The notes beneath the pieces were generated by a model, which worked only from the letters and a program-made list of their open reading frames with translations, was not told the origin of the DNA and did no database searches. Positions 7,501 through 40,778 of a DNA stretch of 64,000 nt are shown here, piece by piece. The DNA comes from Dimorphilus gyrociliatus (taxonomy: Eukaryota > Animalia > Annelida): contig CAJFCJ010000002.1 of assembly GCA_904063045.1 (NCBI GenBank), positions 3,901,891-3,965,890 on the forward strand, given 5' to 3'. Each line of letters opens with the position of its first letter. The first letter of the stretch is position 1. Position numbers and translations under genes: made by a program.

Positions 7501-10500
7501 GCACCCTTTCAATCGTGCCGAACTTGATGTAGTTGATGTTGATCGTCTTTCCTTAAACAATGATACAATTGAAGCTCTTTTAACCGGTTTATATGGGTCG
7601 GTATCTGTACCAAAAATAATTAATTGCAAACTCCTTATAACGCCAGAGTTACTTTCTAAAGATCCAGCATTTTCTATTGTTAGCACCCAATCACCAACAG
7701 CTTGTTCACCCCAATAATGAACTGACATAAATGGCCAATCGTGGAAATCGCCCTGAGCTATGTCATTCTTTCTTGAGGGTAGTAAAGTTGAATTGGTACC
7801 GCTCGGACTTTTCAAGTGTAAACGAATATCTCCTCTCCTTGAATAAGATAGTGAGACCTTTGCCTGAACGTGTTCTATGAAACGGATTTCTTCATCAGCT
7901 TTACCGATACAGGCATTCGATTTAACGCTAATTCTCACACCCCAAGAGGAGATTTCTTTGTTAATTTCCAATCTAGGAAGAACGCAAATATGCTGTTCCG
8001 GAACAGTTGTCCACTTCTCAGCCAGTTTCACAACTGAGTTTGCATTCATTAAACCGTATCCATACTTTAAACTCACCTTTCTACCGACACCATTTGTAAT
8101 AAAATCCCCATCTTGTAAAGGATCAGGGTCGGCAGTAACAATAACAATATGTTGCATATCTCTCCAAGTTAAGTCAGGATTAGCCTCAAGAGCAAGAGCA
8201 CATATACCTGCTGCTATAGGAGCAGAGGCGCTTGTACCTGAATGTCCGTCAGTACAACGATCTCTGAGGTCAGTTGTTAGAATTTTAGGATCAAGAGTAT
8301 TATCCCCCGAACTGTAAGTAGTTGCAATTGTAGAAGAGCATTCCTCTAGGTACCAAGGTTTTATCCCATGTACGGTGGCAGACGATATAGATAACGTAAA
8401 TATGCTATTCGTGTATCCATCACAATTGCACGAGTCATCAGCGACGCCGCCGTTACCCGATGCCCAAACGTATATAGAGCCCCTACCGTTCCTGCCTTTA
8501 ACAATACCTTGGATGAAGGCTTCTTTTGCTAGCCTTGCCGGGCCGTCTACGACTTTACCATTGTCATCTGGACCCCAACTAGCGCTATAAATGTCTATAT
8601 GATTTTGACGATGGGACAATGATTCAGCTTCAACGTAATCGCTTACATCGCCATCCAACATTCGAATTCCACCTATCTTAGCATTATAGGCTATTCCTAC
8701 ATTGCATTTTGTATTGTTAGCTTGAGCAGCTACTTCACCCGCACAACGTGTGCCATGCCTGAAGAAAATGAAAAGTGTAAACCCTTATAGAAATTTTTAA
8801 TATCAAAATATATTTGTGTTTTCATCACTATTCTTGAATGTCTTATATTATTTAAAATATAAAAAAAACATAATACAGTGTATATTCTCTGAGTAAAAAT
8901 TTATCTGGGACTAACACGCAAACAATACGGTTTCGGCTTAATAACATCCCCAAAAGCTACAGATGAGGGATCAGAAAATTTCAAAGAGTTTGAATCAACC
9001 AACGAAAAGGACGCTTTACTAATTAGGCCGACAAATATGTTAAAAACCTGTCTTCTGCCAATTGCTTCACCAACACACCTTCGGTGTCCGAAGCCGAAGG
9101 CCGAAACTTTCCTAGCTAAATTTGAGTCAAATTTTCCCTCATTAGTAATAAATCTGAATGGATTTGGTAGTTTTGCATCTTGACCCCACACTGCAGTATC
9201 TTCGCCAATTGACCATAGATTGAGTATAACGATGTTACCCTTTGATAAAGAGACTCCTTTCAAAGCTGTATCCTCTATACAATAGTGGGGAAGGGCAAAT
9301 GGAACAGGTGTCTTCAGTCTTTAAGGAAGGTTTTTGCAACCCTTGTTATATAGTAAAAAAAAAGTTATATTTAACTTTCACCTAAGTTTAAAAGCTTTGG
9401 CTGCTGGAGGAAACTGATGTTAGAAATGGGAATATTTCTTTTTTGACCTTTAATAATTTGACTAGGGACGTTGTTAATAAAGGTGAGAGCAAAAACCTTC
9501 CTTAGTACTTCTGCTATACAAGCTTCAGTTAAGGGCATTTCATTTCGTTTTTCATAAATGGTTTCGAAAGTTTCCTCATCATTCGAAGAAACTCTGCATA
9601 TTTCTGTATATATCATCTTCTGAATGTCCTCCCTTTCAGCAATGAATAACAATAGCCATAGAATTGTAGAACTCGACGTTTCAACGCCAGCGGACAAAAA
9701 TTCAGCTACATTTTTCATCATTCCAATTCTGTCTAATTCGAAAAGAAAATCCGTCATACCGTATTCTAGAGCACAATCAAAGACAGCGTCAACAAGTTTA
9801 TTCATTCTAGATCGAATTTCTGCATTCTTTTTGGCTGGCTGAGGAAGGAAAGAAAGAAAAGTAGGTTGATTCCCAAGAGCAAATAGTTCAGTTGATGCAT
9901 TTGGTGAAAGAAGAATATTGAGTAAATGCTGTTTTACATCACCTTCTTTGCATTTATTATAGAAGACAGCGAACAAAACATTTGCTACAGTTTTTATTAT
10001 GCCATCAACAGGGTCAACTACACCAGATAGATTCCATTCTTCAACGAGTCGATCAACGTAATCGGTAGCAGCTTCACCAACAATGTTTCTCCTATCTTTC
10101 AGTAACGATAATGAATGACGTCTCTTTTGAATTAAGCGATCCCCATAAATATCAAAACTGAGGCTTCCGGTGAGATAATCATTATAGATGGGTAATGGTG
10201 GTCTACTAGACAAATTACGATTCAACGATGCTCTTTTAATAGCATGGTATCCGTTAATGATGGTAACTTTATTCATGCCTAGTTTGACAGAATAGATGTC
10301 TCCATACTTATACCACCAGCCCGTTAAGACTCCAAGAGGATCTGACCGTATTTGAAAAATGTTACCTACTATAGGCCATCCAAAAGGCCCTGCTTTCACT
10401 CTTAACGTTTTCAGGTAAGATGTACTGTAGGTTATAGTCCAATATAGGGCGAATCCAAAAATTACTATAACACTTAGCATCCTCTATTTCTTGTCTTATT

Positions 10501-12938
10501 CGACTATAAAGTCAGAACTCTTCATATAATGATATCGGCGTTAATAATTTAAGTAGATTTGCTATATTTAATATAATGATTAAGGGGAAAAAATAAAAGC
10601 ATTTTCTAAAGTTTATTAGCGTAATTATTGCATTTTATAAAATTTCTCTGTACCCCATATTTTTCTATTTTACAAATCCTAGAGTTTTTCTTTCTGTATT
10701 CAAATTAAGGAAAAAAAAATTGCAATTGTGCTAAATGTCTTTTTCGATTAGTCGGTCATGTAAGAGAATCCTTGAGATGAGAAAAAAAAGATATAAACGA
10801 CTTGGTTGTAGAGTGTGGAATTCTCATATTTAATTTATTCGATAATTAAATAGAAATATATCTAATTTATTAAGTATCCTCCAATACTGTTATGCAATAA
10901 ATTATTAGCGCCGATATCATATTTACTGTATCGTAATTCGAAAACGAACATAAAAACGATAAAATAGCCTGGACTAGGAAAGCGGTCGTTTTCTTTACAA
11001 GAGGTAGTATAAATAAATCAAAATGACTATATACATATATATATATATATATATTTGTTATATACACTGTATAACTAAATATTTAGAAAATTATTATAAA
11101 AGAAATTGATATCATTTTCTAAAATTTAATAAAGATCAGATATTAGTCAAACTAAAAATAAAATAAACTACATCTCTGTGACAACTAGGCTGACAAAATC
11201 GTCAGAACCAACCTACAATTATCGCCTTTTAAATATAGTAAACTGTGTTATCCTTCTATATCACTAAGTACATATATACTGTATATATAAACTATATATA
11301 TATACCACGGATAATTCTTATATTTTTATTTTATAAAGAAAAGAACCGTTTATGTCCTCGAGAATTGGATGTTGCTACTGTCCGCTTTCAACCTATCTGT
11401 ATTCTCCTGGTTATGAAACAGTTTTGCTACCTTTTATACTTTCTTGAATGACATACCAACCTCAATAGATACATTTAGAGGTCAGAATCAGCATTGTAGA
11501 TGGAAGGACAAATCTGCCACACAATACATGTTCGTAAACAAAGACAAAGCGAAACAATTACGCGGAACTCTGTTTTAGAATAATGAACTCTAGGTTACGT
11601 ACCTATTCTCGTTTGTTTCGTCGTATCTAGGCATGGGGTCACTGTCGTGAGAATTTAGGTCGGAGGAGGCTCTTGGATCGTAGTTATTAATTAAATCCGT
11701 ATGGTTATGTTCTATCCCATCATCTAAAATGGTAACGACTACACCTCTTCCAGTGTAGCCTCTGGCCCACGCTTCTCTCACACCCATATCATAATTTCCT
11801 GGTTCAGCTCCGCCCCTAAGGTACCACATTTTCGACCACAATTCATCATTGAAATTGTCAAGTTGTTTATCCGTTCGCCTTACTCTTTTCTTTACATATT
11901 GCTGTTCTGCCCACGTCACTGACTTATCAGTTTTGAGACGGTTTTTTGCCCACATTTTAGGCCTTAGAGATCTTTTAGAAATACCGCGATGTTCCAATAG
12001 ATAGTAATTCCGTAGACTTCCAATCTTTATAATATAGAGGGAAATTGAAAAAAAAATTAATTATCGAATATAATGAGAATAAAGAAACAACGCCTGGTTT
12101 TTCCTAAAGAAATGTCATCTAAATGGAATAACAGTTATAATTCATTTTTTAGACTACTGACAGTTTTTTTTTATTAAAGGTCACAATGAAAGTCGTTACA
12201 ATGTTACTGAACTATAAAAGAGGTGCCTAAGACAAAAAGAAACACAGTAAAAATTTCGTACTAATTAACACTTGTTTAATGAAAATTATACAATAACCTA
12301 GAACCGACGTTGTCATGCATAGAATATAAATTTTCCGTGACAAAAATATCTTTTATTTAGTTCTTTACTACTGTAATCTGTAATTAGACATAGACAAACA
12401 AGTTATTCCATTCACAAATACTTTCATGCAGTTGACGCCTACGGTAAATTGTGCTTGTCAGACGTTTGGCAGAGAGCCTTTTGGTCATTCAACTAGACGC
12501 CAAGTGCGTGAGAGAAGGTTTCCTTTCAGTTTTAATTACAAAACCAGACATTGGAATCAATAGTATGATAATACGAAGAAGGTTTCGTTTAAGAGCTCTC
12601 TTGTTTAGAAGTGTATAGGCCTATTATTACCAAGTCGTAAAAAAATATAAAAAAAAAAGAAGTAAAAGAAATTATGATGTATGTTTCCTAAAGTACTGAA
12701 TGAGGAGAGAGGGGCACGAGAGGTTTTTATAGAAACAAAACTCTTCAAAGAGAATTATTACTGCAATATAAGAAAAATTCATTACCTGTCTGACGAATCG
12801 AAATCCATTTTCGTGAGCTACTCTCCTCGCTTCTTTAACACCTTCGGGAATATGAACTGCCCACTTATTTAAATAATGCTGCTTCGCTGAGCAGTATATA
12901 GCGAGAAATAAGATGATATTTGAAAAAATGTAACGCAT
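4584..12938 (-). CDS. Furin/PCSK5-like subtilisin-type proprotein convertase (signal peptide, prodomain, S8 catalytic, P domain, Cys-rich repeats, TM)
   Basis: Exons 12938-12786, 12024-11603, 8758-6926, 5874-5473, then 5366-5150 and/or 5118-5079 + 4751-4584. Signal peptide MRYIFSNIILFLAIYCSA; pro-site KKRVRR; catalytic ILDDG, HGTRCAG, ASGNGG, GTSASAP; RRGD in the P domain; furin-like CxxCxxxC repeats. 3' exon usage is uncertain. Confidence 0.92.
8901..10480 (-). CDS. Cytochrome P450 (clan-2-like), nested in intron 2 of the convertase, two exons
   Basis: N-terminal TM anchor, GPFGWPIVGN, I-helix AGVETS, K-helix EVLR, PNPFRF (PERF-like), heme motif FGFGHRRCVGE. Exon 1 10480-~9501, exon 2 ~9318-8901. 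Confidence 0.9.
9322..9504. mobile_element. Inverted-repeat-bounded element (MITE/introner-like) coinciding with the P450 intron
   Basis: TAAGGAAGGTTTTTGC (9322-9337) and GCAAAAACCTTCCTTA (9489-9504) are perfect 16-bp inverted repeats; the interior is non-coding and AT-rich. No second copy seen in the window. Confidence 0.5.
11035..11054. repeat. (AT)n microsatellite
   Basis: Visible AT dinucleotide run in the convertase intron. Confidence 0.9.
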
Positions 12939-14766: not shown

Positions 14767-17700
14767 TTACACCCAAGGCTCCCAACCCAGCCAAGTTAGC
14801 CCAAGAATATGTTTATCAGTGGCCTGATCAATTAAGGCATCAACTTGTTGTTCAACAGTTAAGTTATCCTCTGGTAATTGAGCTCGGATGTTTGCTTCGC
14901 TACCCATCAAAATTTGCAAATAGTCATTTAAAGGTGAAACTTCTAATCTACCGCTTTTCTTTGAAGGAACTTCGCAGGTCAAACCTTTCAGTTTACCGCT
15001 TTCCAAATCGATTTTTGTCAAATAAGCAGGGTTAGATCCCTGTAGTTTTCTTTTTACAAGTTCAATCTTTCGCTTAGGTAACCAATTGGCGGTTATACTA
15101 GTCTTGTCCATTGTAGCTATGGAATCCTTTCCAGTTGGACCAAAAGCACTTTTTTCGAGCTTTTCCTCAAAGTGTTTAAGGTCTACAGATGGTTCCTTTA
15201 TAAAAACATCTAATGCTGCTAGTAAAAGATCAGCATTTCTTCTTAAACTATTGAAGATGTGAATCATAGTTGACCGGAATAGTCCAACAGCTTTATGCGG
15301 TTGCATTAAATTTAAAAATTGTCTTGTCAGACGAAACGGAATTAGTTCAGGAATTGGCAGAATCTTAAAGAAGGAAATTAAAATATGCTTAAACCGAAAA
15401 CCCATATGAAAATCTCACCTGAGTTGCGACACCGAATGCATAACCAAAATCAATTCCGACGACTGCTCCATTAGTCTTATCGATCATTGTATTAGACAAA
15501 TGTCTGTCCCCAATTCCTAAAAGATATATATAGGCACACATTTGAGCATTAGACTTTGTAAAGTTGCGCTTTAGAATAAAATATGCTTCTGAAGAAGCTG
15601 CCATCTCCTGATAAGCCCCTCTATCATGTGAAATAAAAATTAGTTAATTAAAGGGCTCTTATATACATTTTGTTTTTAAACTGCCACGAATATTTACCTT
15701 GATAAGTTGTCTGGAACTAAAGATTGTAATTTCTTAAAATTAGTAATAACATCTTGCCTCTTCCTATAACCGACGTTTAGGTAGTACAAATGAGCGTCTT
15801 TTAATTGAGATTTGCTCGAAAAGTCTATCAGCCATTTCTTATATTCTATGCGTCTTTAAAATTATTTGAAGAACTCAATTTAATTGACTTTTAATACTTT
15901 TAGTTATAACTTACAATTTATCCAATCGTTTGTCGTCCTTTCCCAAAGCCGAAACAAGAAAATCTTTGACTGGAATAGTATTTTCCATCCATTCAATGAG
16001 GCCAACTCTGGTTGTAAGTGGAATCACATTGTAAGTTCTTAATTGTAAATCTCTTTGAGAGCATTGGCAATCCTCCCTCATTATTTCGTTCATAAGGCGG
16101 AATATTTGAATGACTCTTTGATCCAATCTTAAATCTTCTCCACTCTTAACTAGAAGCTATTCTCGAAGGTAAAGTGCATTTTTTCAATTATTTAAAAAGA
16201 TTAAACGGTATTTTTACCTTGTGCTCCTTGGCATCTGTTCCTCTTACAGTTATAACTTTTGGCTTCCTTATAGATTTCATAACCTGAACATTATTATCAA
16301 AGCTAGATATTTTTATATGGCGCTCAGGCATAGGCTTAAAATCTCCTGTATATTGACCAGGTATTTCTATGCTATGTGAAATTTTCATCCCTTGAAAATT
16401 AGCTAGCCAGTCAGAATATTCAGTCAACGTTTTTGGAGGCCTCAAGTCTTCGTCCATAGCACTTTTTATTTCACTTTGAAGAGCTTGGATATTATCATTA
16501 ACAGCCTATTGAACAACAACAAGAAGTTTAGTTTATAGAATCGCTACCATAAAGCCTGAAACTAACTTTTATGCTCATTGAAGATATTAGTTGGCCACGT
16601 GATCCGAAAGCTTTTTCAATTTTATTTTTAAATTTCTATATAATATAATTAAGGTATTATTTAATTTAATATCTCTTTAATTAGTTACCTTTGCAAAACG
16701 TCGCCTGTAAGCTCCTAATTTTACAGTAATCGGCATTTCAGAAGAAGATTGATCTCTACTGTACAGACTGTCATCACTAGTTCAATGGCAATAGTTAGAA
16801 TGAATTCAGTTAGAATAATATTTTTAAATGAGAGAAAGCACTTACTCTTCTTCAGTTTCGCATAACAATTCTCTTTGTAGATTATCATATATTTTTTGCA
16901 CTTTTTCTAATCTTTTCAGTTTTGATTCTTTTTGAATTGCCTCTATCTTTTCCTGAATAATTTATAAAAATATTCAATTAAATATTAAAAAGAGCTAGAT
17001 AGTCTATAATCATCAAGTAAATGACATACTGCAAAAAGCACATTGGGCTGCTCAAATTGCTCAAGAGATTTAACAAAAGTAGAGATATATGGATTTCTTC
17101 CAAGAATAGAAGAAATTTCTTTTTGTACACATATCGCTCGCCTTCCATCCAAAGTATCATCGAATTTAAAACCTTCAGAGCTAAGATTAAAGGGATATAC
17201 CAGAGCCTGTATTAAATGACATATAATAGCTAATAAGTAAATAGGCATAACACTGACATTGGGATAAGTAGCAGCCACTTTCAGTAGAGGTTGATGCACT
17301 ATTTTAGAAATATTTTTGTCTAATAAAGCAGTCATTTGTCCGAGCCAAGATAGATACATCCAACAAGGGATGTCAGCAGTCTGTAAAGAGAGTTTATAGA
17401 TTAGTGCCTATAATAAAATATACTTTTCTATTGAAACAAGCGTACGCTTTCAATAAACACATCCGAATGTTGGGGAAATCTTTCCATTATTTGTAATAAT
17501 CCAGCAAATCTATGTATTGCCTTTCGATTACCTAATTTCATGGCCCTACACAAAGATTTTATGCAATTTGCTGCACAATCGCTTATCCATTCTTTATCAT
17601 CAGCATCTGATTGTTACCATTAATTACTTAATTATTTCAAAATAAAAGAAAGAATATTTATAGGAAACTTACTGGAATCATCATTTTCCCTCAATATTTT

Positions 17701-20700
17701 TGCGCAAAATATTGCCAATAACAACTGGGACCTACTTTCAATTGTATAATTTTTAATAACATTGCAAGTCTTAATTGATTCTTTAAAGAAGGAACAGGAT
17801 TGTTTTTCTAATAACCTTCGTACCTTTATAGAATGAAGAAATGGAATATTTTAAGAAAAAGAAGTAGATCTAGTAGCATTTTACTTACTTGAGAAGTATT
17901 AAATGATTCAGAGTCTGATATTTCACATAGTTTAAACAATGTTTTTGATGTTTCATCAAAATTTTCCTCAGTTATAAAATTACTAATATCTTGAAGTGTT
18001 TCCGCTTTAAGTATCATTAATCTTGAATATTGATCTCTTTCTATTTCTGTGCTCTTCTGAGATAAATAATTGTCTGATTTTGTAATAAAATAAAAAGAAA
18101 ATTTATTAATAAGATTGATGAAGATTATTTGAAATGTTCAGTAGTTTTTTATTTAATTTGTTACCTAATTCATCAAAGCTAGTAGAAAGCTTTTCTATTT
18201 TAATAGTATCCGATATTTTATCGTTAAGTAATAGTTTTTGTCTTAAAACATTTATTCTTGCTTCAATCCAATCTGTTTTCAATTCTAGAGCAGTTTTAGC
18301 CATTCTCATTTTCTATAGCGTGACACATTTAATATATAAATATAGCTTTCTTAATTTACATAATTACGTAAATACATATATTATTTTACTTACGAAATTT
18401 GTATCTTTCAATAAATTTTCGGCTAACCCAAAGTTATTTTGTGATTTAGCACTGTCAATTTGATGTAAACGAAAGCTTAATTGATCTCTTATTAACGTTT
18501 CCACTGTAACTTTATCATCATCAATTTTACTGCAAATTTCGCTTAATTGATCGATATACATCATTCTGAAATTTCTATAGTTATAAATCCCATAAACACA
18601 AAACTTGAAAGCTTTCTTACCTATTAGTTATAATATCATCCCATATACTCTGAGGATCGGACAGATGATTAAGCTTTCTATTCATCCATTTATCATTTAG
18701 TGCATGTACTTTAGAAGATCTTAAGGAATCTCTATTAGTTATTAAATCCAAAAATTCGCCCATTTCCTGAAGCTTTTGAACACTTCTGAGTTTCTCTAAT
18801 CTGGGGGTTTTCATTATTGTTCCAATACCTGACCATTCCTATATAATTCAACGCTTATATTAATTTTTAGTTATAAATTGGGAGGCAGTAATTACATTAA
18901 GAAATTGTTCGAAGGCATTGGTTGTGTAGTATTTAGCTCGATCATACTTTTCTTGATAAATATACATAAGAGCCAATCTTTCACTATACTTAGCCTGAAA
19001 AAAGTATATCACATTTGAATATATTTTAAAACTAAAAGTATAATAACCTCCAAGAGCTTTTTCTTATCGTCATGTTGCATACTCTTATCGATAAAATCAA
19101 ATAAATCCTGTTGAATTTTTCCATTTTGTATTAATTTCAATTTACTTTTTAACATTAAAGGTAAATAATGATCTTGATAATATGTATCAAGCCAGACATT
19201 CTCTAGTCCACTATGCCCAGCTTCATCAATTGTCGCTGTTGTTATATCATTAATTTTTTCCCAATCGCACAGATTGTTATAACATTCCAATCGGGCTTCA
19301 TCCCACAAATCTTTTTCTACTTCTTCGGGAGGATATTTCCAGCTCTCTCGGCTTAATGACTTTAAATAATAAAACGGTACTCGATAAATCAATAAAAAGT
19401 GAGTGATTTATTAAACAGGGACATATTTTGTTACCTCTGTATATATATCAACAGCTGAAAGATAATCTCCTTTAGCTTCCAAAGCCAGGGCTTCACTAGT
19501 TTTACCCTCGCCCTTGATACGATACTCGAATATGCTTTGAAGATTATCAAAGTCATCTAATGATTTGTACAGCCTGTAAATGTTATTAAGAAGGAATGAT
19601 GAAAAGCTGAATTAATAATAATAAAACAAGTGTAATGTACTTTGCTAGTTCAATCCATACAATTGCCTTATCGGAGGATGCTTTTGATATTTTTGCTTTC
19701 TTCGCTGTTGGTGGTCTTGGTTTGACAAAATCTTTTTGTATGAGAATATCTTCTAATAGAAGAATGCCTAGAGGACCTTGTCCACCCCCAATACACGCTT
19801 CACCAATTTTGGAAGTGTCTATGTCGATTAACCTATTAAAGTATTGCAAAAGTAGATCATTTTTTTTGAACCGAGAAATAATCAACATACGACATACCGC
19901 AAGTTTGATCTTATTATATCTAAAATTGCCCCAAAGAGGGGAGGATAATAATAATCAGATGAACTTATCATCTTCTCGATTCCGTTAAGAATATTTGCCC
20001 TTATTTCACGCATTCTATCCTCCGATTCCATCATCTCATGCATTAAAGCTGAAAACAGTTGGGTAAAGAGAATACGAGCCAGTTGTGAGTCTCTCTGAGC
20101 AACCGCTTGCAGAGGAGCAATAATACAAGCGTATTTGATTTGAATATCTGGTAAATCTCCCGTTCGGTACTTTCTATAGATTGTAACTTGATTTTCTCTT
20201 CTTTCTTTTCTTTCTTTCTCTATTTCCTTTGGTTTAGATAGAAAAACTTACAGTTTCATTTTGCGAAACTATCAAATAAAGATAACGAAAAAACCTTTCT
20301 CATATTCCTCTGACGAATTTGCTTTTTAACGAAATAAAGTTGCTTTGATTCAGAGTCTTTTAAAAATCGTCGACGCAATCTAAGGATTTCGTCAGTATCT
20401 TCACCTGCTTTTGATAAGGATTTTGAAAATATTCGTGTTTGTCTTTCATATAATTTATCAATAAATACCTTGTTCTGATGTTGTCGCTTTAGCAGCATCC
20501 AATTTTTTCTTTGGAGATTTAATTTTTTTGACGTTGGAAAACAATAGATTAGATTCACTTTGAGTAGGTGTAGATAGGGTGCTCAAAGTTCCAGATTCAG
20601 CAAAAGTATCAACTGTTGACTGAGTTAGCCAGTTGAACGGGCGTTTTTCTTTATAAAAAAAAATTATGTTTTTCTATCACATATTTATCACAGTTTAACG

Positions 20701-23700
20701 TCTTACTAGCAGTTGCTACATCAATCGTTTGAGAGAACTCTCCATCCTGTGTTGCACGAATATAACCCTCTCCACCTGCTTGAGTAGAGTCCATCAAGGA
20801 ATTATCAATGAAAAGAGAGTTCATAGTATGTCTTCTTCTCCACGAATGCGTAACGTTAAATTCAGAAAATCTTTTTGATAAATTAATTTATAAAAGAGGA
20901 CTTAAATGTAAAAACTATATTCGTACTTGCACTCAGATAGTGGACGATCAAACAATTCTTTATTGAAATCAGGACTTTTTGATGTCATTTCCAGAAGAAG
21001 ATTAGTAGAGTATGATAAATATTGTTTTTCTGTTTTTGGACTATACATAGCTCCTAACATAGCAATTGTTCTATCAATAGTGGCTGTAGGGAGTCGTCTT
21101 TCATCGCTCCAAAAGTTTTGAATAGCAATCCTTTTTGAATATACATTATATTAAAGTTTCTTATTAGAATGTTTAATTTTTTATACCTGTAATCTTCATC
21201 TAGTAATCCTTGTAGTAAAACATCTTTTGTATTTAAAATTATATCTCTATTAGCTAGTTCATCAGAGCCGCTGAAAGAGAAGATTTATTACAGATCATTT
21301 CGAATAGAGATTAAAACTATATTCTTACTGGTATCTGTCATACAGGTCAATGAAAATATCATACATTAACCCACGACACTTGGTACTTGTTGATGATACA
21401 AAGGAGATTAAAGAAGGTATAAAATAAAGTATTTCTTCTTGTTTTAAGTTTGGTAAAAGTCCTTTTACAATTTTCAAAGCCGCATACTGACATCCTTCAT
21501 CACTTGAAAGTAACAGTTTACTTTTAATATAGTCTTAAATAACACGTTAGAAATATTGTATTATTTACCGATGATTTAATATTTCTAGCAACTCTTTATT
21601 CTTTAATTCTTCAAAAGCATTCTCGATCTTTGACAAAGAATTATTTACTATTTCCAAACCAAATTCTCGTAATTCACCAAAAAGTTGAGGTAAGAGAAAT
21701 AAAACTTTACTTGATTCTCTGCAAAACAAATGAATAAAGCAATAGGATAAGTTTTGAGTAAATAGACATATAATTTACTTCTCAGCTATGCTTTTATAAT
21801 TTAATTGAATTTTATAAAGACAGGTAATATATTGATCAATTTTGGACGTTTTAATACTGTCCAAACGCTTTGACAGCTCGTCGTCTTTCGATTCCAACCA
21901 AGATTTATCTGTAGAATTTGCTGATAAATATTTAAGAACCATTCCAGTTACCTCCGCAGCTGAGCCGTAAGCCCCTCTACTTCTTTGTGAAAGGCAGTTA
22001 AAAAGAGCATTGTAATATCTGAAACACAAAAGCCGTTGATTAATGTGTATTTACAAGTATATGAGTAATAGAGAATATTTTTTAAATTCGTTACCGATTC
22101 TTATCGATTCTGCCGGTAGGGTCTGCGCCATCCTTAAAAGGAGGCAAGTTATTTGCCACCAATACACCAAGAATTTGTACTCCAGTAACGTTTCTACTCC
22201 GGTTGTCTTCAGATTTGTGACCCAAGTGCTCATAAACCGCCCTAAATATGTAATCTTTTAATAAGAACAAAGAAAAAAACTTATCTATAATACCCGTAAG
22301 GAACATCTAAGCTATTTCTCCAAACTTCTACAAGAGTTTTTAAGACTTCTAAATTATTACGGAGTACAGCTCTTGTTTCATGGTGACAGTTCTTGATAAG
22401 GTATAAGAGTAGTTTGCTAGACATTGTTCGATCCACAATGTTATTCTGAAAAGTTATATTATTAAAATCCTTTCCAATTCTTTTACTCAATCTTACCTCT
22501 GGAACAGCAACTTCATGCCAGGACAGTATGGTCACTATTAGGTCTACGACGAAATAGTTCAATCCTCCTCCTCCTACCCTATCATTAATTATTAAATTTA
22601 TTAGAGGACCAAACCAATTCTTTGCATATGGCTTAAATGTCTAGAAAGTAAAAAAAATATTGTTTACAAAAGCTCATTTTATAGCTAATGAAACCTTACT
22701 TTGGGACTATTAACAACTAATTTGGCTATAAATAGTTTTATATTAGTGTGAGTTTCGTGATGATTTATTTTTTCGAGGATATTTTTCATCCAGGTTGGCA
22801 TATCTTTTCCTGGTTCAGCAGGTGTAATATTATTTCGCAACATATGACGTAAGAGAGCCGTCATACAAGGCATGCACTCGTGTTCATTGATTGGATCCAT
22901 TTCCATATAGATTGTATCTTCGGAATCTTCCATTATGTCCATCTTTTGAAAGATAGTAATTACATTAAGTAGCTCAATATTTTTAGAGTTCACTTACCGT
23001 TTCATTCATCGATGTTGAAAAGGATATATCAGATCCCGACGATGTTCTTGACTGATAAATTAAAATATTATACAAAATTCAAAAGTTCTTTTACTGAAAT
23101 CAACGAACTGTAAATGATGAAGTGAAATCATAATGAGACGCCTCAACGCTTAAGCTACTATCAGCCAAGTATTGGGAAGATGGATAGTATAAACTTTGAT
23201 TAAAGCTGGAGTCAAAGGATTGTCGACGATAAGACCTTACTTCATTTCTAACGGATATAAATTGTCTCTTTTTGGAAAACAATTTCTGTTAATAAATAAT
23301 ATATATTATTAGGGTCTTTCAATAAAATAAGATATTAACATCCATTTCCATGGCAAACTCATATCTTTTAGTAGTATCTATCATGTTCTCAAACAGAAAA
23401 GAACCCTTAAAAAATGAAGCAAACTTTATAGATCACACATTAATAAGTACTATAAACTTACTCCAAATAAAAAGCTATTATAAAATCTAACATCTGTTTG
23501 AGTACAAGCAATAATTGAAACCAAGCAATTATAGGCAGCGCAATGATATTTCCTTCTCAATTCAAGATAAGAATTTTCATTTCGGCAATCTTCAGATTTG
23601 ACAGAATTACAAATTCTATTTTGAAATAATAAAAGAAATTAACTACTGAACTAATTGTAGGCCAATACAAACTTTGTAAAAAATTTTGTCATTTCGTTGC

Positions 23701-26700
23701 CATTAGTTGCCGAACCTTTGGAGTATACCAAGTTTATTCTTGAATCTTTTGTATTGACATCGTTTTTCGATAGTCGAGCGTATAAAATTTCAATTAATTT
23801 AAATACAGCAAGTTTTTCAACTAGATGATTTTCCATTTCGGTCTGTAAAACAATTTATATAAGCGAAATTCAAGTCATCACTCATCGGAAGTCTACCTTT
23901 GTTAGCTTTGCTTCAACAATTTCAGCCAATCGACAAATATAGCTCAAAAAGAATTCTGTGATTGCACTTGAAGAAGCACTTCTTAATAAAGGAAGACAGA
24001 CTCTTTCCAATATTGACAACCTGATTTCAACTGTGAACGATTGATCCATAAGCATTCCGTATGGAATATCAATCAGGGGTTTTTGTTTATCTTTACTAAT
24101 ACTTTTTTGAATAAATAAAATAATAATAAATAAGATAAAAATGTATAATTGAATGAAGCGAATAGTAACCTTTTTATTAAGTCAACGACGCTCTTTTGAA
24201 GAGATTCTTCACATGCGTGAACTTTCTCTCGACAAAATATACTTATGGTTAGTTTAAGTAGTATTTCACTTCCTGTCAATTTAAGAGAATCTAGGATCTA
24301 AAATATAAATTAGAGTAATATTAAAATGATAGAACGCAAAAAAAAACAACTACCTTATTCACTGCGCTAACATACTGAATATATTTTTGGGTTCCAATTT
24401 CAAATTCAGAACTTTTTAAGGGGAAATAATCATTTACAAGGGAATTTAACGCCTCATCTAATTTTCGCTTCTCGGGACTTGACACAGATGCAAAGAACAT
24501 TAGCAAATCCAGGAGCTTATTCTGTAAGGTTAAATATGTATACCTGTTATCATTTAAACGCAAAGATTTGTGTTTTACCTTCGTAGTTAAACCACTTTTC
24601 GGGTCTCTTAGTAGTGTAATATATGTTTCAAAAATCTTTTTAAAGTGTTTATTACTTTTATCAGTAGCAATCTAAAAATAGAGAATTCTTATTACTACCA
24701 CATCTATCCAATGTTATAATTTTCAAAACTGTTCTTACCTTTGAATCGATAAGAATTAGTTTCGTAAGAAGAGAAATAATTAAGTCTTTTGACTCATCTT
24801 CACCACTTTCGCTCGTCCAATTTTGTAACAGTTCCCAATCTGCAAGTATTCCTCCAACTACAGTAGGACCGTCACTAAAATAAAAGACTGTTTTCACTCT
24901 TGTTTCTGAAAGATTGATAAAATTATCAAACCTTTTTCGAATATCTCTATCTTTAACAACGAAATCTAACAATCCATTGAAAATATTAGTACAGAGATAT
25001 TGATGTCTTTCAACGGATGATGTTAAATCTTTCAATCTATCAGGGCGCTTTACCAAACTAAGATTGATGATGGATTGAAACTGGCAATAAAAGTAGAGTC
25101 CCCTATCTGATGGCTTAGATTGACTGGTATTCCAAACTTCTTCTTTCGAATACAATTTACTTATTAGGGCCTTGAAAAAGAAATTCATTAAATAATAGGA
25201 ACACTTTACAAGAAAAATCGATTTTTTACTTCATCATTCATAGATATGCTTAGTCGTAAGAAACTGTTCAAAACGTCTGATGAAAGGGGCGTGAGTCTTC
25301 GAGCTGTTAATTTGTTACCATCTTTCATAACAACACTCTTTTTGAAAGAAAAAAAGTTATAAAAGGAAAAGTTTTATACAAATAAACAACAAACATCAAA
25401 AACATAATTTAGTAAAGTTTCTGCCAGTTCCTTAGTGTCCAAGCAATCGGAAAGAATTTTTAAATCATTTAATCGCTCATATCCCTGAACAACGCTTATT
25501 AGTGATACAAGATCACAAGTACTATCTTCAAGATTGTCAGGCAGTATCGCGGATAGCATTAAACTTCTAAAAGATGAAAGAGAACGATAGTTATTACAAT
25601 TGATTAATAAATATTATCCTTTATACTTTTTGTTTTCGGTTAAATTCTTAACAGAATCTTTCATATTAATGATAAGATTTTGTGGTAAATTTCGCAATAA
25701 TCGCTTGGTGCATGAAGATACCTAGTTGAAAAGTATAAAAATATATACAGTACACGTGTATTTTTATTTGGAGTGTTTAAAAGCATTACCTCATCGGGTA
25801 ATCTCTTTGCAGTTTCAATATCTGCAAGATCAAATCCAAGAGATTTAGCGTCTAAAAAGCAGGTAAATAGCAATTTGAAGAAATCTTCCGAAAGGACTTC
25901 AGCTGAGAGTATCTAGATAGAAGTTTACAATTATTTTCCCATTTTTGTCAAATTATTATCAAAAAAGGCTTACTTTTAAGCTTTCCTTTACATTTTGACT
26001 AATTGCAGCTTCGATTAAATGAAATATTCGCACTATAACTGTGCATTTCAATCTGAGGATATATAAAAAGCCATTAAGTTGTCTAGTTCAATATCAGCAT
26101 AAATGTATAAGAAAAAACCTATTAAATACTGTAACTTCTTTAACTGTAAAGATTGTTGACGAATTTGATTTAAAACATTTGGTAAGCGAGTCCAAATTTA
26201 ACATAGCAATATCACTGATAAAATGGGACATAACTTCAAATAATCTACTAGGATTTGGATCTTGCTTTTCTGAAATATATAATTTTTCTATTTTACTTTA
26301 CATTTCAAAATAGAAAGTAAAGGACAAACTTGAAAACAGATCTGTTGTGCTTAAAAATCTTTGACTAAGTATCCATGTATAGCAATCCAAAGAAGCAAGA
26401 AATTTTTCAAACCAACTGAGCATAGAAGATAGGTCAAAAGTTTGAAATGCATCGAATAAATTGGGAACAGTAGCGATACCATTCGATTCCAAGGCATCAT
26501 ATTCGAATCTACATATGATAAACACATTAAAAGTCAAACTGATTTTTGAAAGTAACAATCTACCTAGCAATGAAATAAGCTGGTCCTTTACTTGGGTCTT
26601 TTAACAAGAGTTTAAAATAGTCTCTTGGACTCTTAATATCATCCGATAAAGTCACGCACAAATTACAAATAATTTGCATGCTCATATGTCTAGATTCTGG

Positions 26701-39084: not shown

Positions 39085-39550
39085 TTAAATCTTCATACCA
39101 TCTCCTGCTGCAAGACTTTCTTGACTTATTTCCTTCGTTTTATAATTAACCCTTAGCCATTCAGTAGGATTTTCCGTTGATGCTTCTTCCGGAGCAATTT
39201 GTAAGAGGAGTGTATCGACAGGTTTGTCGTAAGTAAAATAATAGACAAACTAGAGAAAGAAGGGAGCACTAATGAATTTTTTTTTGGTTCAGCGATAAGG
39301 AAACACCAACCTTGTTGTCAAAGACTAGGAGTTCTTGAATTGGTATTGAAAATCGACTAAAGCTCGATGGATCATCGGCAGGTTTAAATATAATAACAAA
39401 TGACGAAGGTGTCTTCGAACTTTGAAAAGTCCAAGACAATCTTAGAAAAGCTCTTGTCAATTTACATCCCTCTAAACAAAATCTGCACGTTGATGAAAGT
39501 CGATCAAAGTCCACAGTTGACTTTTGATTATTCGAATTCGTATCAGACAT
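39085..39550 (-). CDS. Uncharacterised 134-aa protein, two exons
   Basis: Exon 39550-39311, 61-nt GT..AG intron, exon 39249-39085 stays in frame; ACCGGAAG promoter motif at 39704. No family recognised. Confidence 0.6.
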
Positions 39551-40778
39551 GACTTTTCACTGTGATCGTATTATTATTTTGGCTTTTATTCTTTACTATT
39601 CGAACGTTTAATAAAACGTAAATAATCCGCATTCAAAATTAGAAAGATTAATAAACGACAACGTTGATTATATTCACTTTTCTAAGCCTATCACTGATGC
39701 ATGACCGGGAAGGGAAAATTAAAACATCGATTTTGTCGAAAATTAATTCCTTTGAATCAGCAAAATGCTGATGAGAAGCATTTGTATAGAAGTTCGTTTG
39801 CTTGTTTTATTGATTGTTTAAAACACGAAAATTTCATCAGGGATAATCAACTATCCGTAGGTCGGATCGCTAATTTACTTGAGGTAGTTGTTTAATTATA
39901 CCAGAATGACATTTCTCTTTGCACTTCATGTATTTTGCAGTAATGAAGTTTGTTTATTCAAAAAAAACCTACGCAAATCTTATTCATGATTACGTGTATA
40001 TCAATTTTAGTCAAGTCCACTAATAGAATCTTTTTATAAATTAACCTAATTTTTAGTCCAACTTCCATGAAGTGAGTGGGTCGAAGAGAACAATGCTTCT
40101 TAGATCGAATACGGGGTCGATGTGAATTAAGATTGTTCTACACGGCTCATTTACTCTTTAAGTACATAGTATACAATGAAAACAATTAGGAAACGCCAAG
40201 ATTCAAGTTCAATGAACCTATTCATGAGTGATTGACTAAATAGGCCTAAATGCATTGTTTAAGAAGCTAGTAAGAAACATCATACTAATTATATTGTTTA
40301 TATATTTAAATTCTGTTGATTTAGTTTTACTTTAAATTTTTAAAACTGATGATATCATGCTATAAACAAGAGATATCTTATCGAACGTTATTGAAATTTT
40401 TCTTTTTGTTTCTAATAATCCATAAAGTAATAAGAACTAACGAAGAAATAAGACAATAGTCTATTTATTAAAAGATTCGAATTACGTCATGAGCAGAGAT
40501 TATAATTTCAAAAATATATTCTTAAAGTTTGCACAGAATATATCTATATTTTCACAAACTGCAATTGTTTGTTCAAGTATTAATATATATGTTCTGTAAA
40601 TTCGATACTTCTTTTCATTGTCTCAATCGAAGATTACGCAAATTAAAACTTGTCGAATAGTAAAAAGAATACAATAATTGCCAGGAACCAGTTTATCGTC
40701 ACGCTACACCAGATTCAGAATGAATTAGCGCGCGGCAGACAGCGCTGTCGACTGTAAACATAGCATTTGTGATCAGAT

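What the first reader, a model, noticed from the sequence alone, without database searches (positions are those of the whole stretch)
9312..9505. P450 intron whose ends are a perfect 16-bp inverted repeat, with a preferred non-canonical GA donor (introner-like / hairpin-defined intron)
Seen: on the gene strand the intron opens ...GAA GTA C[TAAG GAAGGTTTTTGC] and closes [GCAAAAACCTTCCTTA] AAG ACTG; the bracketed 16-mers are exact reverse complements, and AAG occurs at both junctions like a target-site duplication. Two in-frame solutions exist. (a) GA..AG, 9500-9319 (182 nt), gives EVLR-LKTP-VPFALPH with the usual four residues between ExxR and VP (cf. CYP1A1 ETFR-HSSF-VPFTIPH). (b) GT..AG, 9496-9312 (185 nt), gives EVLRK-TP-VP, one residue short, using an AG 7 nt behind a nearer AG. 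Both donors sit inside the predicted stem. Inference: a non-autonomous DNA transposon became the intron of an otherwise intronless gene, or RNA structure defines a non-canonical intron. If unspliced, the gene loses its heme domain.
Basis: partly seen in the sequence, partly recalled or inferred. Interest (0 to 1): 0.82.

Follow-up and report, generated by a model that had tools for sequence, protein, structure and literature searches.

The report
Hairpin-ended GA-AG intron in P450 gene
The only intron of a cytochrome P450 gene in the tiny marine worm Dimorphilus gyrociliatus starts with GA instead of the near-universal GT, and its two ends pair into a 16-base helix that a related species also keeps; it is probably a real, structure-assisted intron and not a transposon scar.

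Summary
A perfect 16-nt inverted repeat (9504-9489 / 9337-9322, gene strand is minus) brackets the single intron of a CYP1/CYP17-like P450 gene. It is the only perfect inverted repeat of 14 nt or more in the 64-kb window.

The GA donor is supported. A syntenic ortholog from a related species has the intron at the same place. There, GA..AG is the only in-frame solution. Three uninterrupted homologs have four residues between ExxR and VP, as model (a) gives. Exon 2 is under strong purifying selection (dN/dS 0.06), so the intron must be removed in frame.

The transposon reading is not supported. The interior is single-copy in the 78-Mb genome. The termini occur no more often than a control pattern. 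The "AAG duplication" is not placed like a target-site duplication and is not kept in the ortholog.

The end helix is conserved (13 bp perfect in the ortholog, against about 50% identity at neutral sites). 74 neighbouring GT-AG introns lack such a helix.

The scan met this kind of intron before on other DNA of this genome (MSH5, PXYLP1, PTCHD, dispatched). I re-checked MSH5: GA and helix are kept while the paired letters differ.

No RNA evidence was obtainable. The helix's role in splicing is inferred.

The parts
9501..10480 (-). P450 exon 1 (ATG at 10480; ends with the first two bases AG of the Arg codon of the ExxR motif)
   Evidence: Translation. Pfam PF00067 E=2.5e-33, matching profile positions up to 334. 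72% identical to ortholog P0001.
9319..9500 (-). Intron, 182 nt, GA..AG, phase 2 (5' splice site AAG|GAAGGT; 3' splice site TTAAAG|A)
   Evidence: This is the only solution whose counterpart is in frame in the ortholog. It gives the four-residue ExxR-to-VP spacing seen in uninterrupted homologs. It also gives gap-free continuity with the Pfam profile, 334 then 335.
9489..9504 (-). 5' arm of the terminal helix; covers the last 4 exon bases and intron +1 to +12, including the GA donor and the GT at +5/+6
   Evidence: It is 16/16 identical in the ortholog.
9322..9337 (-). 3' arm of the terminal helix; intron -19 to -4, lying where a polypyrimidine tract would be and ending 3 nt before the acceptor AG
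   Evidence: It is 13/15 identical plus one gap in the ortholog, which leaves a 13-bp perfect helix there.
9446..9484 (-). Inner hairpin just after the 5' arm (ACCTTTA.. pairing with ..TAAAGGT), conserved in the ortholog
   Evidence: Inverted repeat I1, the minimum-free-energy folds and the conserved blocks in alignment A1.
9495..9496 (-). GT at intron +5/+6: donor of the rival model (b), or a cryptic site
   Evidence: In the ortholog no AG is in frame with this GT.
9312..9313 (-). Second AG, 7 nt inside exon 2: acceptor of the rival model (b)
8901..9318 (-). P450 exon 2 (heme-binding region FGFGHRRCVGE; stop codon 8903-8901)
   Evidence: Translation. Pfam E=1.5e-20, profile 335-458. Best solved-structure matches are CYP1A1, CYP1B1 and CYP17. 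dN/dS against the ortholog is 0.064.

Best explanation
This is a genuine spliceosomal (U2-type) intron of a functional CYP1/CYP17-like P450 gene of Dimorphilus gyrociliatus. It is cut at AAG|GAAGGT ... TTAAAG|A (window 9500-9319, minus strand). Its 5' splice site matches the U1 consensus everywhere except that +2 is A instead of U. The last four exon bases and the first twelve intron bases pair with intron positions -19 to -4. This closes the 182-nt intron into a stem and places the acceptor region next to the end of exon 1. The intron, its GA start and the helix predate the split from a related species. The helix is kept by selection and is not a transposon's terminal repeat. Shown here: the repeat, its conservation, the reading-frame argument for GA..AG, purifying selection on exon 2, single-copy status, and the lack of such helices in nearby GT-AG introns. 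Inferred: the helix helps a weakened donor to be spliced. It could do so by bringing the two ends together in a worm whose splicing favours very short introns, or by holding exon 1 near the 3' splice site for the second step, which GA donors are reported to perform poorly.
For: Repeat and its rarity. The fold closes the intron with the 16-bp stem, z = -3.25. Ortholog in conserved synteny: intron at the same codon position, GA kept, 13-bp perfect helix. In the ortholog neither AG after the GT donor is in frame, so only GA..AG yields EVLR-LRTP-VPFALPH. Uninterrupted homologs have four residues between ExxR and VP: P0003 (INTI), paralog L016 (HACV), paralog L017 (FISH). Pfam profile positions 334 and 335 are contiguous under model (a). 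Exon 2 has dN/dS 0.064 with dS about 1.7, and fourfold sites are only 46-54% identical. Against that background the 5' arm is 16/16 identical, the 3' arm 13/15, and the interior 75/125. End-duplex energy is -27.5 kcal/mol here and -21.1 in the ortholog. For 38+36 GT-AG introns of the neighbouring DNA-PKcs gene the median is about -4 and the strongest is -13.9. A second case that I checked myself is the MSH5 intron: AAG|GAAAGT donor and a 15/16 helix in this genome, and GA plus a helix of different sequence in the related species. The genome's U1 genes carry the canonical 5' end, so the donor is a one-mismatch U1 site. The genome paper reports that splicing in this worm is most efficient for short introns, median 66 bp (PMC7854359).
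Against: No RNA evidence for the junction could be obtained; the word search with exon 2 found nothing. The P450 helix shows no compensatory change: the arms are simply conserved. The 5' arm overlaps the exon and the splice site, and the 3' arm overlaps a pyrimidine tract, so part of the conservation could be for those signals. A stem that buries a 5' splice site normally inhibits U1 binding. In the window species an in-frame GT..AG alternative exists. No convincing branch-point motif was identified. My unannotated survey of 324 kb found no further verified case.
Confidence: 0.7

Rival explanations
1. The intron is an ordinary GT-AG intron spliced at 9496..9312 (model b), giving a protein one residue shorter. 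The inverted repeat has no role in splicing.
For: The GT and an in-frame AG exist in the window species. GT-AG is by far the commonest type here: all 38 neighbouring DNA-PKcs introns have a GT-AG solution.
Against: In the ortholog no AG is in frame with this GT, yet exon 2 is under strong purifying selection. Model (b) skips the nearer AG. It also leaves three instead of four residues between ExxR and VP, unlike all uninterrupted homologs. AAG|GTTTTT is a poor donor.
Confidence: 0.1
2. The intron was created by insertion of a short non-autonomous DNA transposon (introner or MITE). The 16-nt repeat is its terminal inverted repeat and AAG its target-site duplication.
For: Terminal inverted repeat. 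The intron is absent from the closest paralogs and from a distant homolog, so it was gained in this lineage. Transposon-born introns are known in other eukaryotes (review PMC11282704, listed).
Against: The interior is single-copy in the 78-Mb genome. The terminus pattern is no commoner than its backwards control. The repeat runs 4 nt into the exon, so AAG is not outside both arms. In the ortholog the 3' copy reads TAG. The intron is old, shared across dS of at least 0.8, yet its arms are far better kept than its interior. That pattern argues for selection on pairing and not for decay of a relic. An ancient origin from an extinct family cannot be excluded.
Confidence: 0.1
3. The helix is a brake, not a help. 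By burying the 5' splice site it causes regulated intron retention, which truncates the enzyme before the heme site and so tunes P450 output.
For: Stems over 5' splice sites generally inhibit splicing (general knowledge). Read-through meets a stop 42 codons into the intron. The arms are conserved.
Against: The same layout recurs with GA donors in unrelated housekeeping-type genes such as MSH5, where such regulation has no obvious purpose. The pairing of non-GT donors with helices points to compensation.
Confidence: 0.08
4. The intron is removed without the spliceosome, by a structure-guided pathway like the one proposed for euglenid nonconventional introns.
For: Non-canonical border plus a helix joining the intron ends, which covers +4..+6 and -8..-6 as in euglenids (PMC4770533).
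Against: G at +1, AG at the 3' end, AG before the donor, and a match to U1 at 7 of 8 positions are all spliceosomal hallmarks. No such pathway is known in animals.
Confidence: 0.04

Closest known systems
U2-type introns with GA donors (vertebrate FGFR1-3; about 12% of introns in the copepod Eurytemora affinis, PMC5714493)
   Same: G at +1, A at +2, AG acceptor. AG is obligate at the end of the upstream exon and A at +3, exactly as here (AAG|GAAGGT). In the copepod these introns also look recently gained.
   Different: The part of that paper I read (part 1 of 2) describes no pairing between the intron ends. Here, and in the MSH5 case, the donor sits inside a 13-16 bp helix with the 3' end.
Structure-bridged (AC)m-(GT)n introns of teleost fish (Lin et al. 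2016, PMC4691745)
   Same: Complementary sequences at opposite ends of an intron form a bridging helix that enforces splice-site pairing. The 3' strand sits where U2AF2 would bind.
   Different: The fish helices are made of simple dinucleotide repeats and flank canonical GT-AG sites. Here the arms are unique sequence, span the exon-intron junction, and go with a GA donor.
Euglenid nonconventional and 'intermediate' introns (PMC4770533, PMC3935182)
   Same: A non-canonical border combined with a stable helix that brings the intron ends together. Gain of such introns is ongoing in euglenids.
   Different: Euglenid borders are variable and lack the spliceosomal consensus, and their removal mechanism is unknown. 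This intron keeps every spliceosomal signal except +2U, and it is in an animal.
Introner elements / MITE-derived introns
   Same: Terminal inverted repeat; lineage-specific intron in a mostly intronless gene family.
   Different: No repeat family, no proper target-site duplication, and canonical splice sites are not supplied by the element.

Membership tests
U2-type spliceosomal intron | G at +1 and AG at the 3' end | tested here: met
   G9500 and A9320-G9319; the same in the ortholog.
U2-type spliceosomal intron | U at +2 (GT, rarely GC) | tested here: not met
   A9499, conserved as A in the ortholog. This is what makes it a non-canonical variant.
U2-type spliceosomal intron | 5' splice site complementary to the 5' end of U1 snRNA | tested here: met
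   AG|GAAGGT pairs at -2, -1, +1, +3, +4 (G-U), +5 and +6 with the canonical U1 5' end. That 5' end is present at 10 places in the own genome, 8 of them at the start of Rfam U1 hits.
U2-type spliceosomal intron | Branch point and polypyrimidine tract upstream of the AG | tested here: inconclusive
   A CCTTCCTT tract is present but lies inside the helix. No clear branch-point motif was found by eye.
U2-type spliceosomal intron | Precise removal from mRNA | not testable with these tools
   There is only indirect evidence: exon 2 has dN/dS 0.064 in frame. No transcript-derived protein was found.
U12-type intron | 5' splice site RTATCCTT and branch site TCCTTAAC | tested here: not met
   Neither motif is present at the intron ends.
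Introner / MITE-derived intron | Many similar copies in the genome | tested here: not met
   One match to the 194-nt stretch at E<=10. Termini: 49/42 matches against control 51/39.
Introner / MITE-derived intron | Target-site duplication directly outside both terminal repeats | tested here: not met
   The bases flanking the 16-nt arms are ..GTAC and AAGA... The 5' AAG lies inside the arm, and the ortholog has TAG at the 3' end.
Introner / MITE-derived intron | Terminal inverted repeats | tested here: met
Structure-bridged introns (fish type) | Complementary sequences at opposite intron boundaries predicted to form a stable bridge | tested here: met
Structure-bridged introns (fish type) | Arms made of AC and GT dinucleotide repeats | tested here: not met
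   The arms are unique sequence.
Structure-bridged introns (fish type) | Splicing depends on the bridge | not testable with these tools
   This needs a minigene with arm mutations and compensatory changes.
Mirtron / intronic snoRNA / other known RNA family | Match to a curated RNA family, or the whole intron forming a pre-miRNA hairpin | tested here: not met
   No Rfam match at E<=1 in 8700-11700. The fold is multi-branched behind a 16-bp stem.

The most novel reading that the evidence does not exclude
Dimorphilus has a distinct class of introns in which a non-GT donor (mostly AG|GAARGT) is obligatorily coupled to a helix. The helix spans the 5' exon-intron junction and pairs with the stretch just upstream of the 3' splice site. 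It would act like an exon-binding guide that replaces part of the work of U1 or U2AF, or rescues the second catalytic step. That would be an animal counterpart of the euglenid intermediate introns, and a route by which newly gained introns become spliceable before they acquire canonical signals.
Probability: 0.3. Interest if true: 0.8.

Novelty: new variant of a known kind. Interest (0 to 1): 0.6.

Why it matters
GA donors are classed as near-dead ends for the human and yeast spliceosome, and how some animals tolerate them is unknown. If a helix joining the intron ends is what makes them work here, three things follow. It would be a simple, testable rule for non-canonical splicing in an animal. 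It would explain gene-model errors in this genome. It would also bear on how new introns become functional. The genome paper for this worm does not mention non-canonical splicing at all (PMC7854359). For this gene the practical point is that a GT-AG-only annotation would either truncate the P450 before its heme site or drop a residue next to the ExxR motif.

Tried and rejected
1. First guess of Oikopleura (small genome, GA-AG introns).

2. Unannotated survey for AG|GN donors followed by a complementary stretch, in the window plus 200 kb of contig C1. It showed a modest excess over a complement-only control for AGGA (51 against 20 at 10 nt or more). The individual candidates could not be verified as coding introns:
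- L029 near 1083.
- Window 39687-39441.
- L028 near 2673, which turned out to lie on the non-coding strand inside a GT-AG intron.

3. Duplex scan of 28 AG|GAARGT sites in 324 kb. Only this intron and MSH5 stand out, and MSH5 was fetched on purpose, so this gives no unbiased frequency.

4. Variant U1 with a compensating U. One 13-mer hit at C27:367706 does not continue like U1, and two 1-mismatch 16-mers are within chance expectation. Not supported. Five of the 13 Rfam U1 hits do not show the canonical 13-mer and could not be read.

5. Rfam scan of 8700-11700: nothing. No snoRNA boxes were seen by eye.

6. Twin-intron (stwintron) reading: no internal intron can rebuild a GT after G9500.

7. Search for transcript-derived proteins spanning the junction: none.

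8. The species behind the related Logan assemblies could not be named.

9. The spliced protein was never joined.

Full report
OBSERVATION

The minus strand of the window carries a P450 gene with ATG at 10480 and a stop at 8903-8901.
- Both parts match Pfam PF00067. Exon 1 scores E=2.5e-33 and ends at profile position 334. Exon 2 scores E=1.5e-20 and starts at profile position 335.
- Exon 2 is closest to CYP1A1, CYP1B1 and CYP17 among solved structures.
- The reading frame is broken once, right after the ExxR motif.
- The repeat finder reports arms 9322-9337 and 9489-9504, 16 nt and 100% complementary.
- This is the only perfect inverted repeat of 14 nt or more with a 20-400 nt loop in the 64-kb window. 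None of 50 block shuffles reaches 16 nt.
- The 16-mer occurs only at these two places in the window.

ORGANISM

The window lies in a 77,897,245-base assembly of 349 contigs. The published Dimorphilus gyrociliatus assembly is about 78 Mb in about 350 scaffolds (PMC7854359). I take the identification as very likely, but I did not test it by sequence. That paper reports a median intron of 66 bp and most efficient splicing for short introns. It never mentions non-canonical splicing.

WHICH SPLICE SITES

A word search with exon 1 found a 72%-identical protein from Logan assemblies of several SRA runs. Its contig is syntenic with the window over 22 kb, through DNA-PKcs, a furin-like gene, the P450 and CFAP58.

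The ortholog has an intron at the same codon position (L010 7038-7221, 184 nt).
- There the donor reads AAG|GAAGGT and the acceptor reads CCTTTAG|G.
- With the GT four bases downstream, neither AG that follows is in frame. The nearer AG brings a TAG stop straight after the junction, and the next AG reads out of frame into a stop.
- So only GA..AG gives EVLR-LRTP-VPFALPH.
- The same cut in the window gives EVLR-LKTP-VPFALPH.

Three homologs that are uninterrupted at this site all have four residues between ExxR and VP:
- P0003, with INTI.
- The closest own paralog L016, with HACV.
- L017, with FISH.

Under model (a) the two Pfam alignments abut without a gap, at 334 and 335. Model (b) needs a one-position deletion.

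Exon 2 has dN/dS 0.064 at dS about 1.7, and exon 1 has 0.22. The gene is therefore functional in both lineages and the intron must be removed in frame. Together these results favour GA(9500)..AG(9319). Direct RNA evidence is lacking. No transcript-derived protein spanning the junction was found.

NOT A TRANSPOSON

- The 194-nt stretch has a single match in the own genome at E<=10.
- The terminus pattern with up to two mismatches is as frequent (49 forward, 42 reverse) as the same pattern read backwards (51, 39).
- The repeat extends four bases into exon 1, so the 5' AAG is inside the arm and the 3' AAG is outside it.
- The bases directly outside the arms (GTAC and AAGA) are not a duplication.
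- In the ortholog the 3' triplet is TAG.
- An AG at both junctions is what splice consensus alone predicts.

The intron is nevertheless lineage-specific. Most P450 genes of this genome sit in open frames of 450-548 codons, and the nearest ones are uninterrupted here. So it was probably gained after the paralogs split and before the two species split. How it was gained remains open.

THE HELIX

RNA folding closes the intron with the 16-bp stem (-44.6 kcal/mol, z = -3.25). The ortholog folds with a 13-bp perfect stem, AAGGAAGGTTTTT with its complement.

Fourfold-degenerate sites are only 46-54% identical between the species. Conservation within the intron, by region:

| Region | Identical to ortholog |
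|---|---|
| 5' arm | 16/16 |
| 3' arm | 13/15 |
| Intron interior | 75/125, plus gaps |

A second, inner hairpin just after the 5' arm is also kept.

As a control I derived GT-AG introns of the neighbouring DNA-PKcs gene from the two-species comparison, 38 in the window and 36 in the relative.
- Their median length is about 55 nt.
- Their median end-duplex energy is about -4 kcal/mol, and the strongest is -13.9.
- The P450 intron scores -27.5 here and -21.1 in the ortholog.

End pairing is therefore not a general property of introns in this genome.

THE SAME THING ELSEWHERE IN THIS GENOME

Earlier notes of this scan describe GA-AG introns with paired ends in MSH5, PXYLP1, PTCHD and dispatched, and GA donors in PGAP4, MOCOS and TRPV. 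I re-examined MSH5 myself.
- In the own genome the intron reads AAG|GAAAGT.., with a 15/16 helix ending five bases before the acceptor.
- In the related species the donor is again AG|GAAAGT, and the ends again pair over 15 positions with one mismatch. The paired letters are different and the intron is about 50 nt shorter.
- A third, more distant relative has no intron there.

This is the covariation that the P450 helix itself does not offer. It supports selection for pairing and not for sequence.

Of 28 AG|GAARGT sites in 324 kb, only the P450 and MSH5 stand out.

HOW IT PROBABLY WORKS

The donor matches the U1 5' end at every position from -2 to +6 except +2. The genome's U1 genes have the canonical 5' end. 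A variant U1 with a compensating base was looked for and not found. So this is a spliceosomal intron with a single-mismatch donor, like the GA donors of the copepod Eurytemora, which also require AG before the cut and A at +3 (PMC5714493).

The helix spans the exon-intron junction and pairs it with the stretch that would otherwise be the pyrimidine tract. I infer that it compensates for the weak donor in one or more of three ways:
- It brings the ends of a 182-nt intron into the geometry of the 40-70 nt introns this worm splices best.
- It holds exon 1 next to the 3' splice site for the second step.
- It replaces part of 3' end recognition, as shown for fish introns bridged by AC and GT repeats (PMC4691745).

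None of this is shown here. A stem over a donor could equally be inhibitory.

COMPARISON AND NOVELTY

GA donors are known, and so are helices that bridge introns. A helix joining intron ends at non-canonical borders is the hallmark of euglenid nonconventional and intermediate introns (PMC4770533). My full-text searches listed no paper describing the coupling of a GA donor with a junction-spanning helix in an animal. I therefore rate this a new variant of a known kind. I score it on what I tested: one well-supported case, plus one re-verified case with covariation.

LIMITS

- No RNA data were available.
- The spliced protein was deliberately never assembled. All searches, alignments and dN/dS were done exon by exon by reference.
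- Five U1 loci could not be read.

Noticed in passing
window 8785-11601 (minus strand): The whole P450 gene lies, in the same orientation, inside a 2.8-kb canonical GT-AG intron of a furin/kexin-like proprotein convertase gene. The donor is AG|GTACGT at 11601. The acceptor precedes G CAT GGC.. (HGTRCAGEVAA) at 8784. The arrangement is the same in the related species.
   Followed up: partly
window 10897-10920 and 10529-10551: A second long-range inverted repeat lies upstream of the P450 start codon. It forms about 22 bp with one mismatch and closes about 345 nt. It is conserved in the ortholog, within a 500-nt non-coding region that is 79% identical between species. Fourfold sites are only about 50% identical. 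There is no Rfam match and no obvious splice sites. It could be a UTR structure or another helix-closed element.
   Followed up: partly
window 14770-25571 (minus strand): 3' part of a DNA-PKcs (PRKDC) gene with about 40 very short introns (median about 55 nt). All have GT-AG solutions and are colinear with the related species.
   Followed up: partly
L051:516-1151 (Logan SRR23434832): A more distant relative's MSH5 reads straight through (AELDCLISLSLIARE) where this genome and its close relative have the GA-AG helix-ended intron. So that intron is also lineage-specific.
   Followed up: partly
G000 U1 loci, e.g. C3:2401789-2401954, C65:4551-4712, C133:19672-19833, C133:34023-34184, C72:27410-27578: Five of 13 Rfam U1 hits do not carry the canonical 5' 13-mer found at the other copies. 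They could be variant U1 genes or pseudogenes.
   Followed up: partly
window 39441-39687 (minus strand): A GC..AG stretch of 247 nt whose first and last ten bases are perfectly complementary (CTTAGAAAAG with CTTTTCTAAG). It contains the ATG of a small ORF. It may be a UTR intron or chance.
   Followed up: no
L029:1083-1176: Candidate 94-nt GA..AG intron (AAG|GAACCT). Intron bases +5 to +14 pair with its last ten bases, between two short open frames of unknown identity.
   Followed up: no
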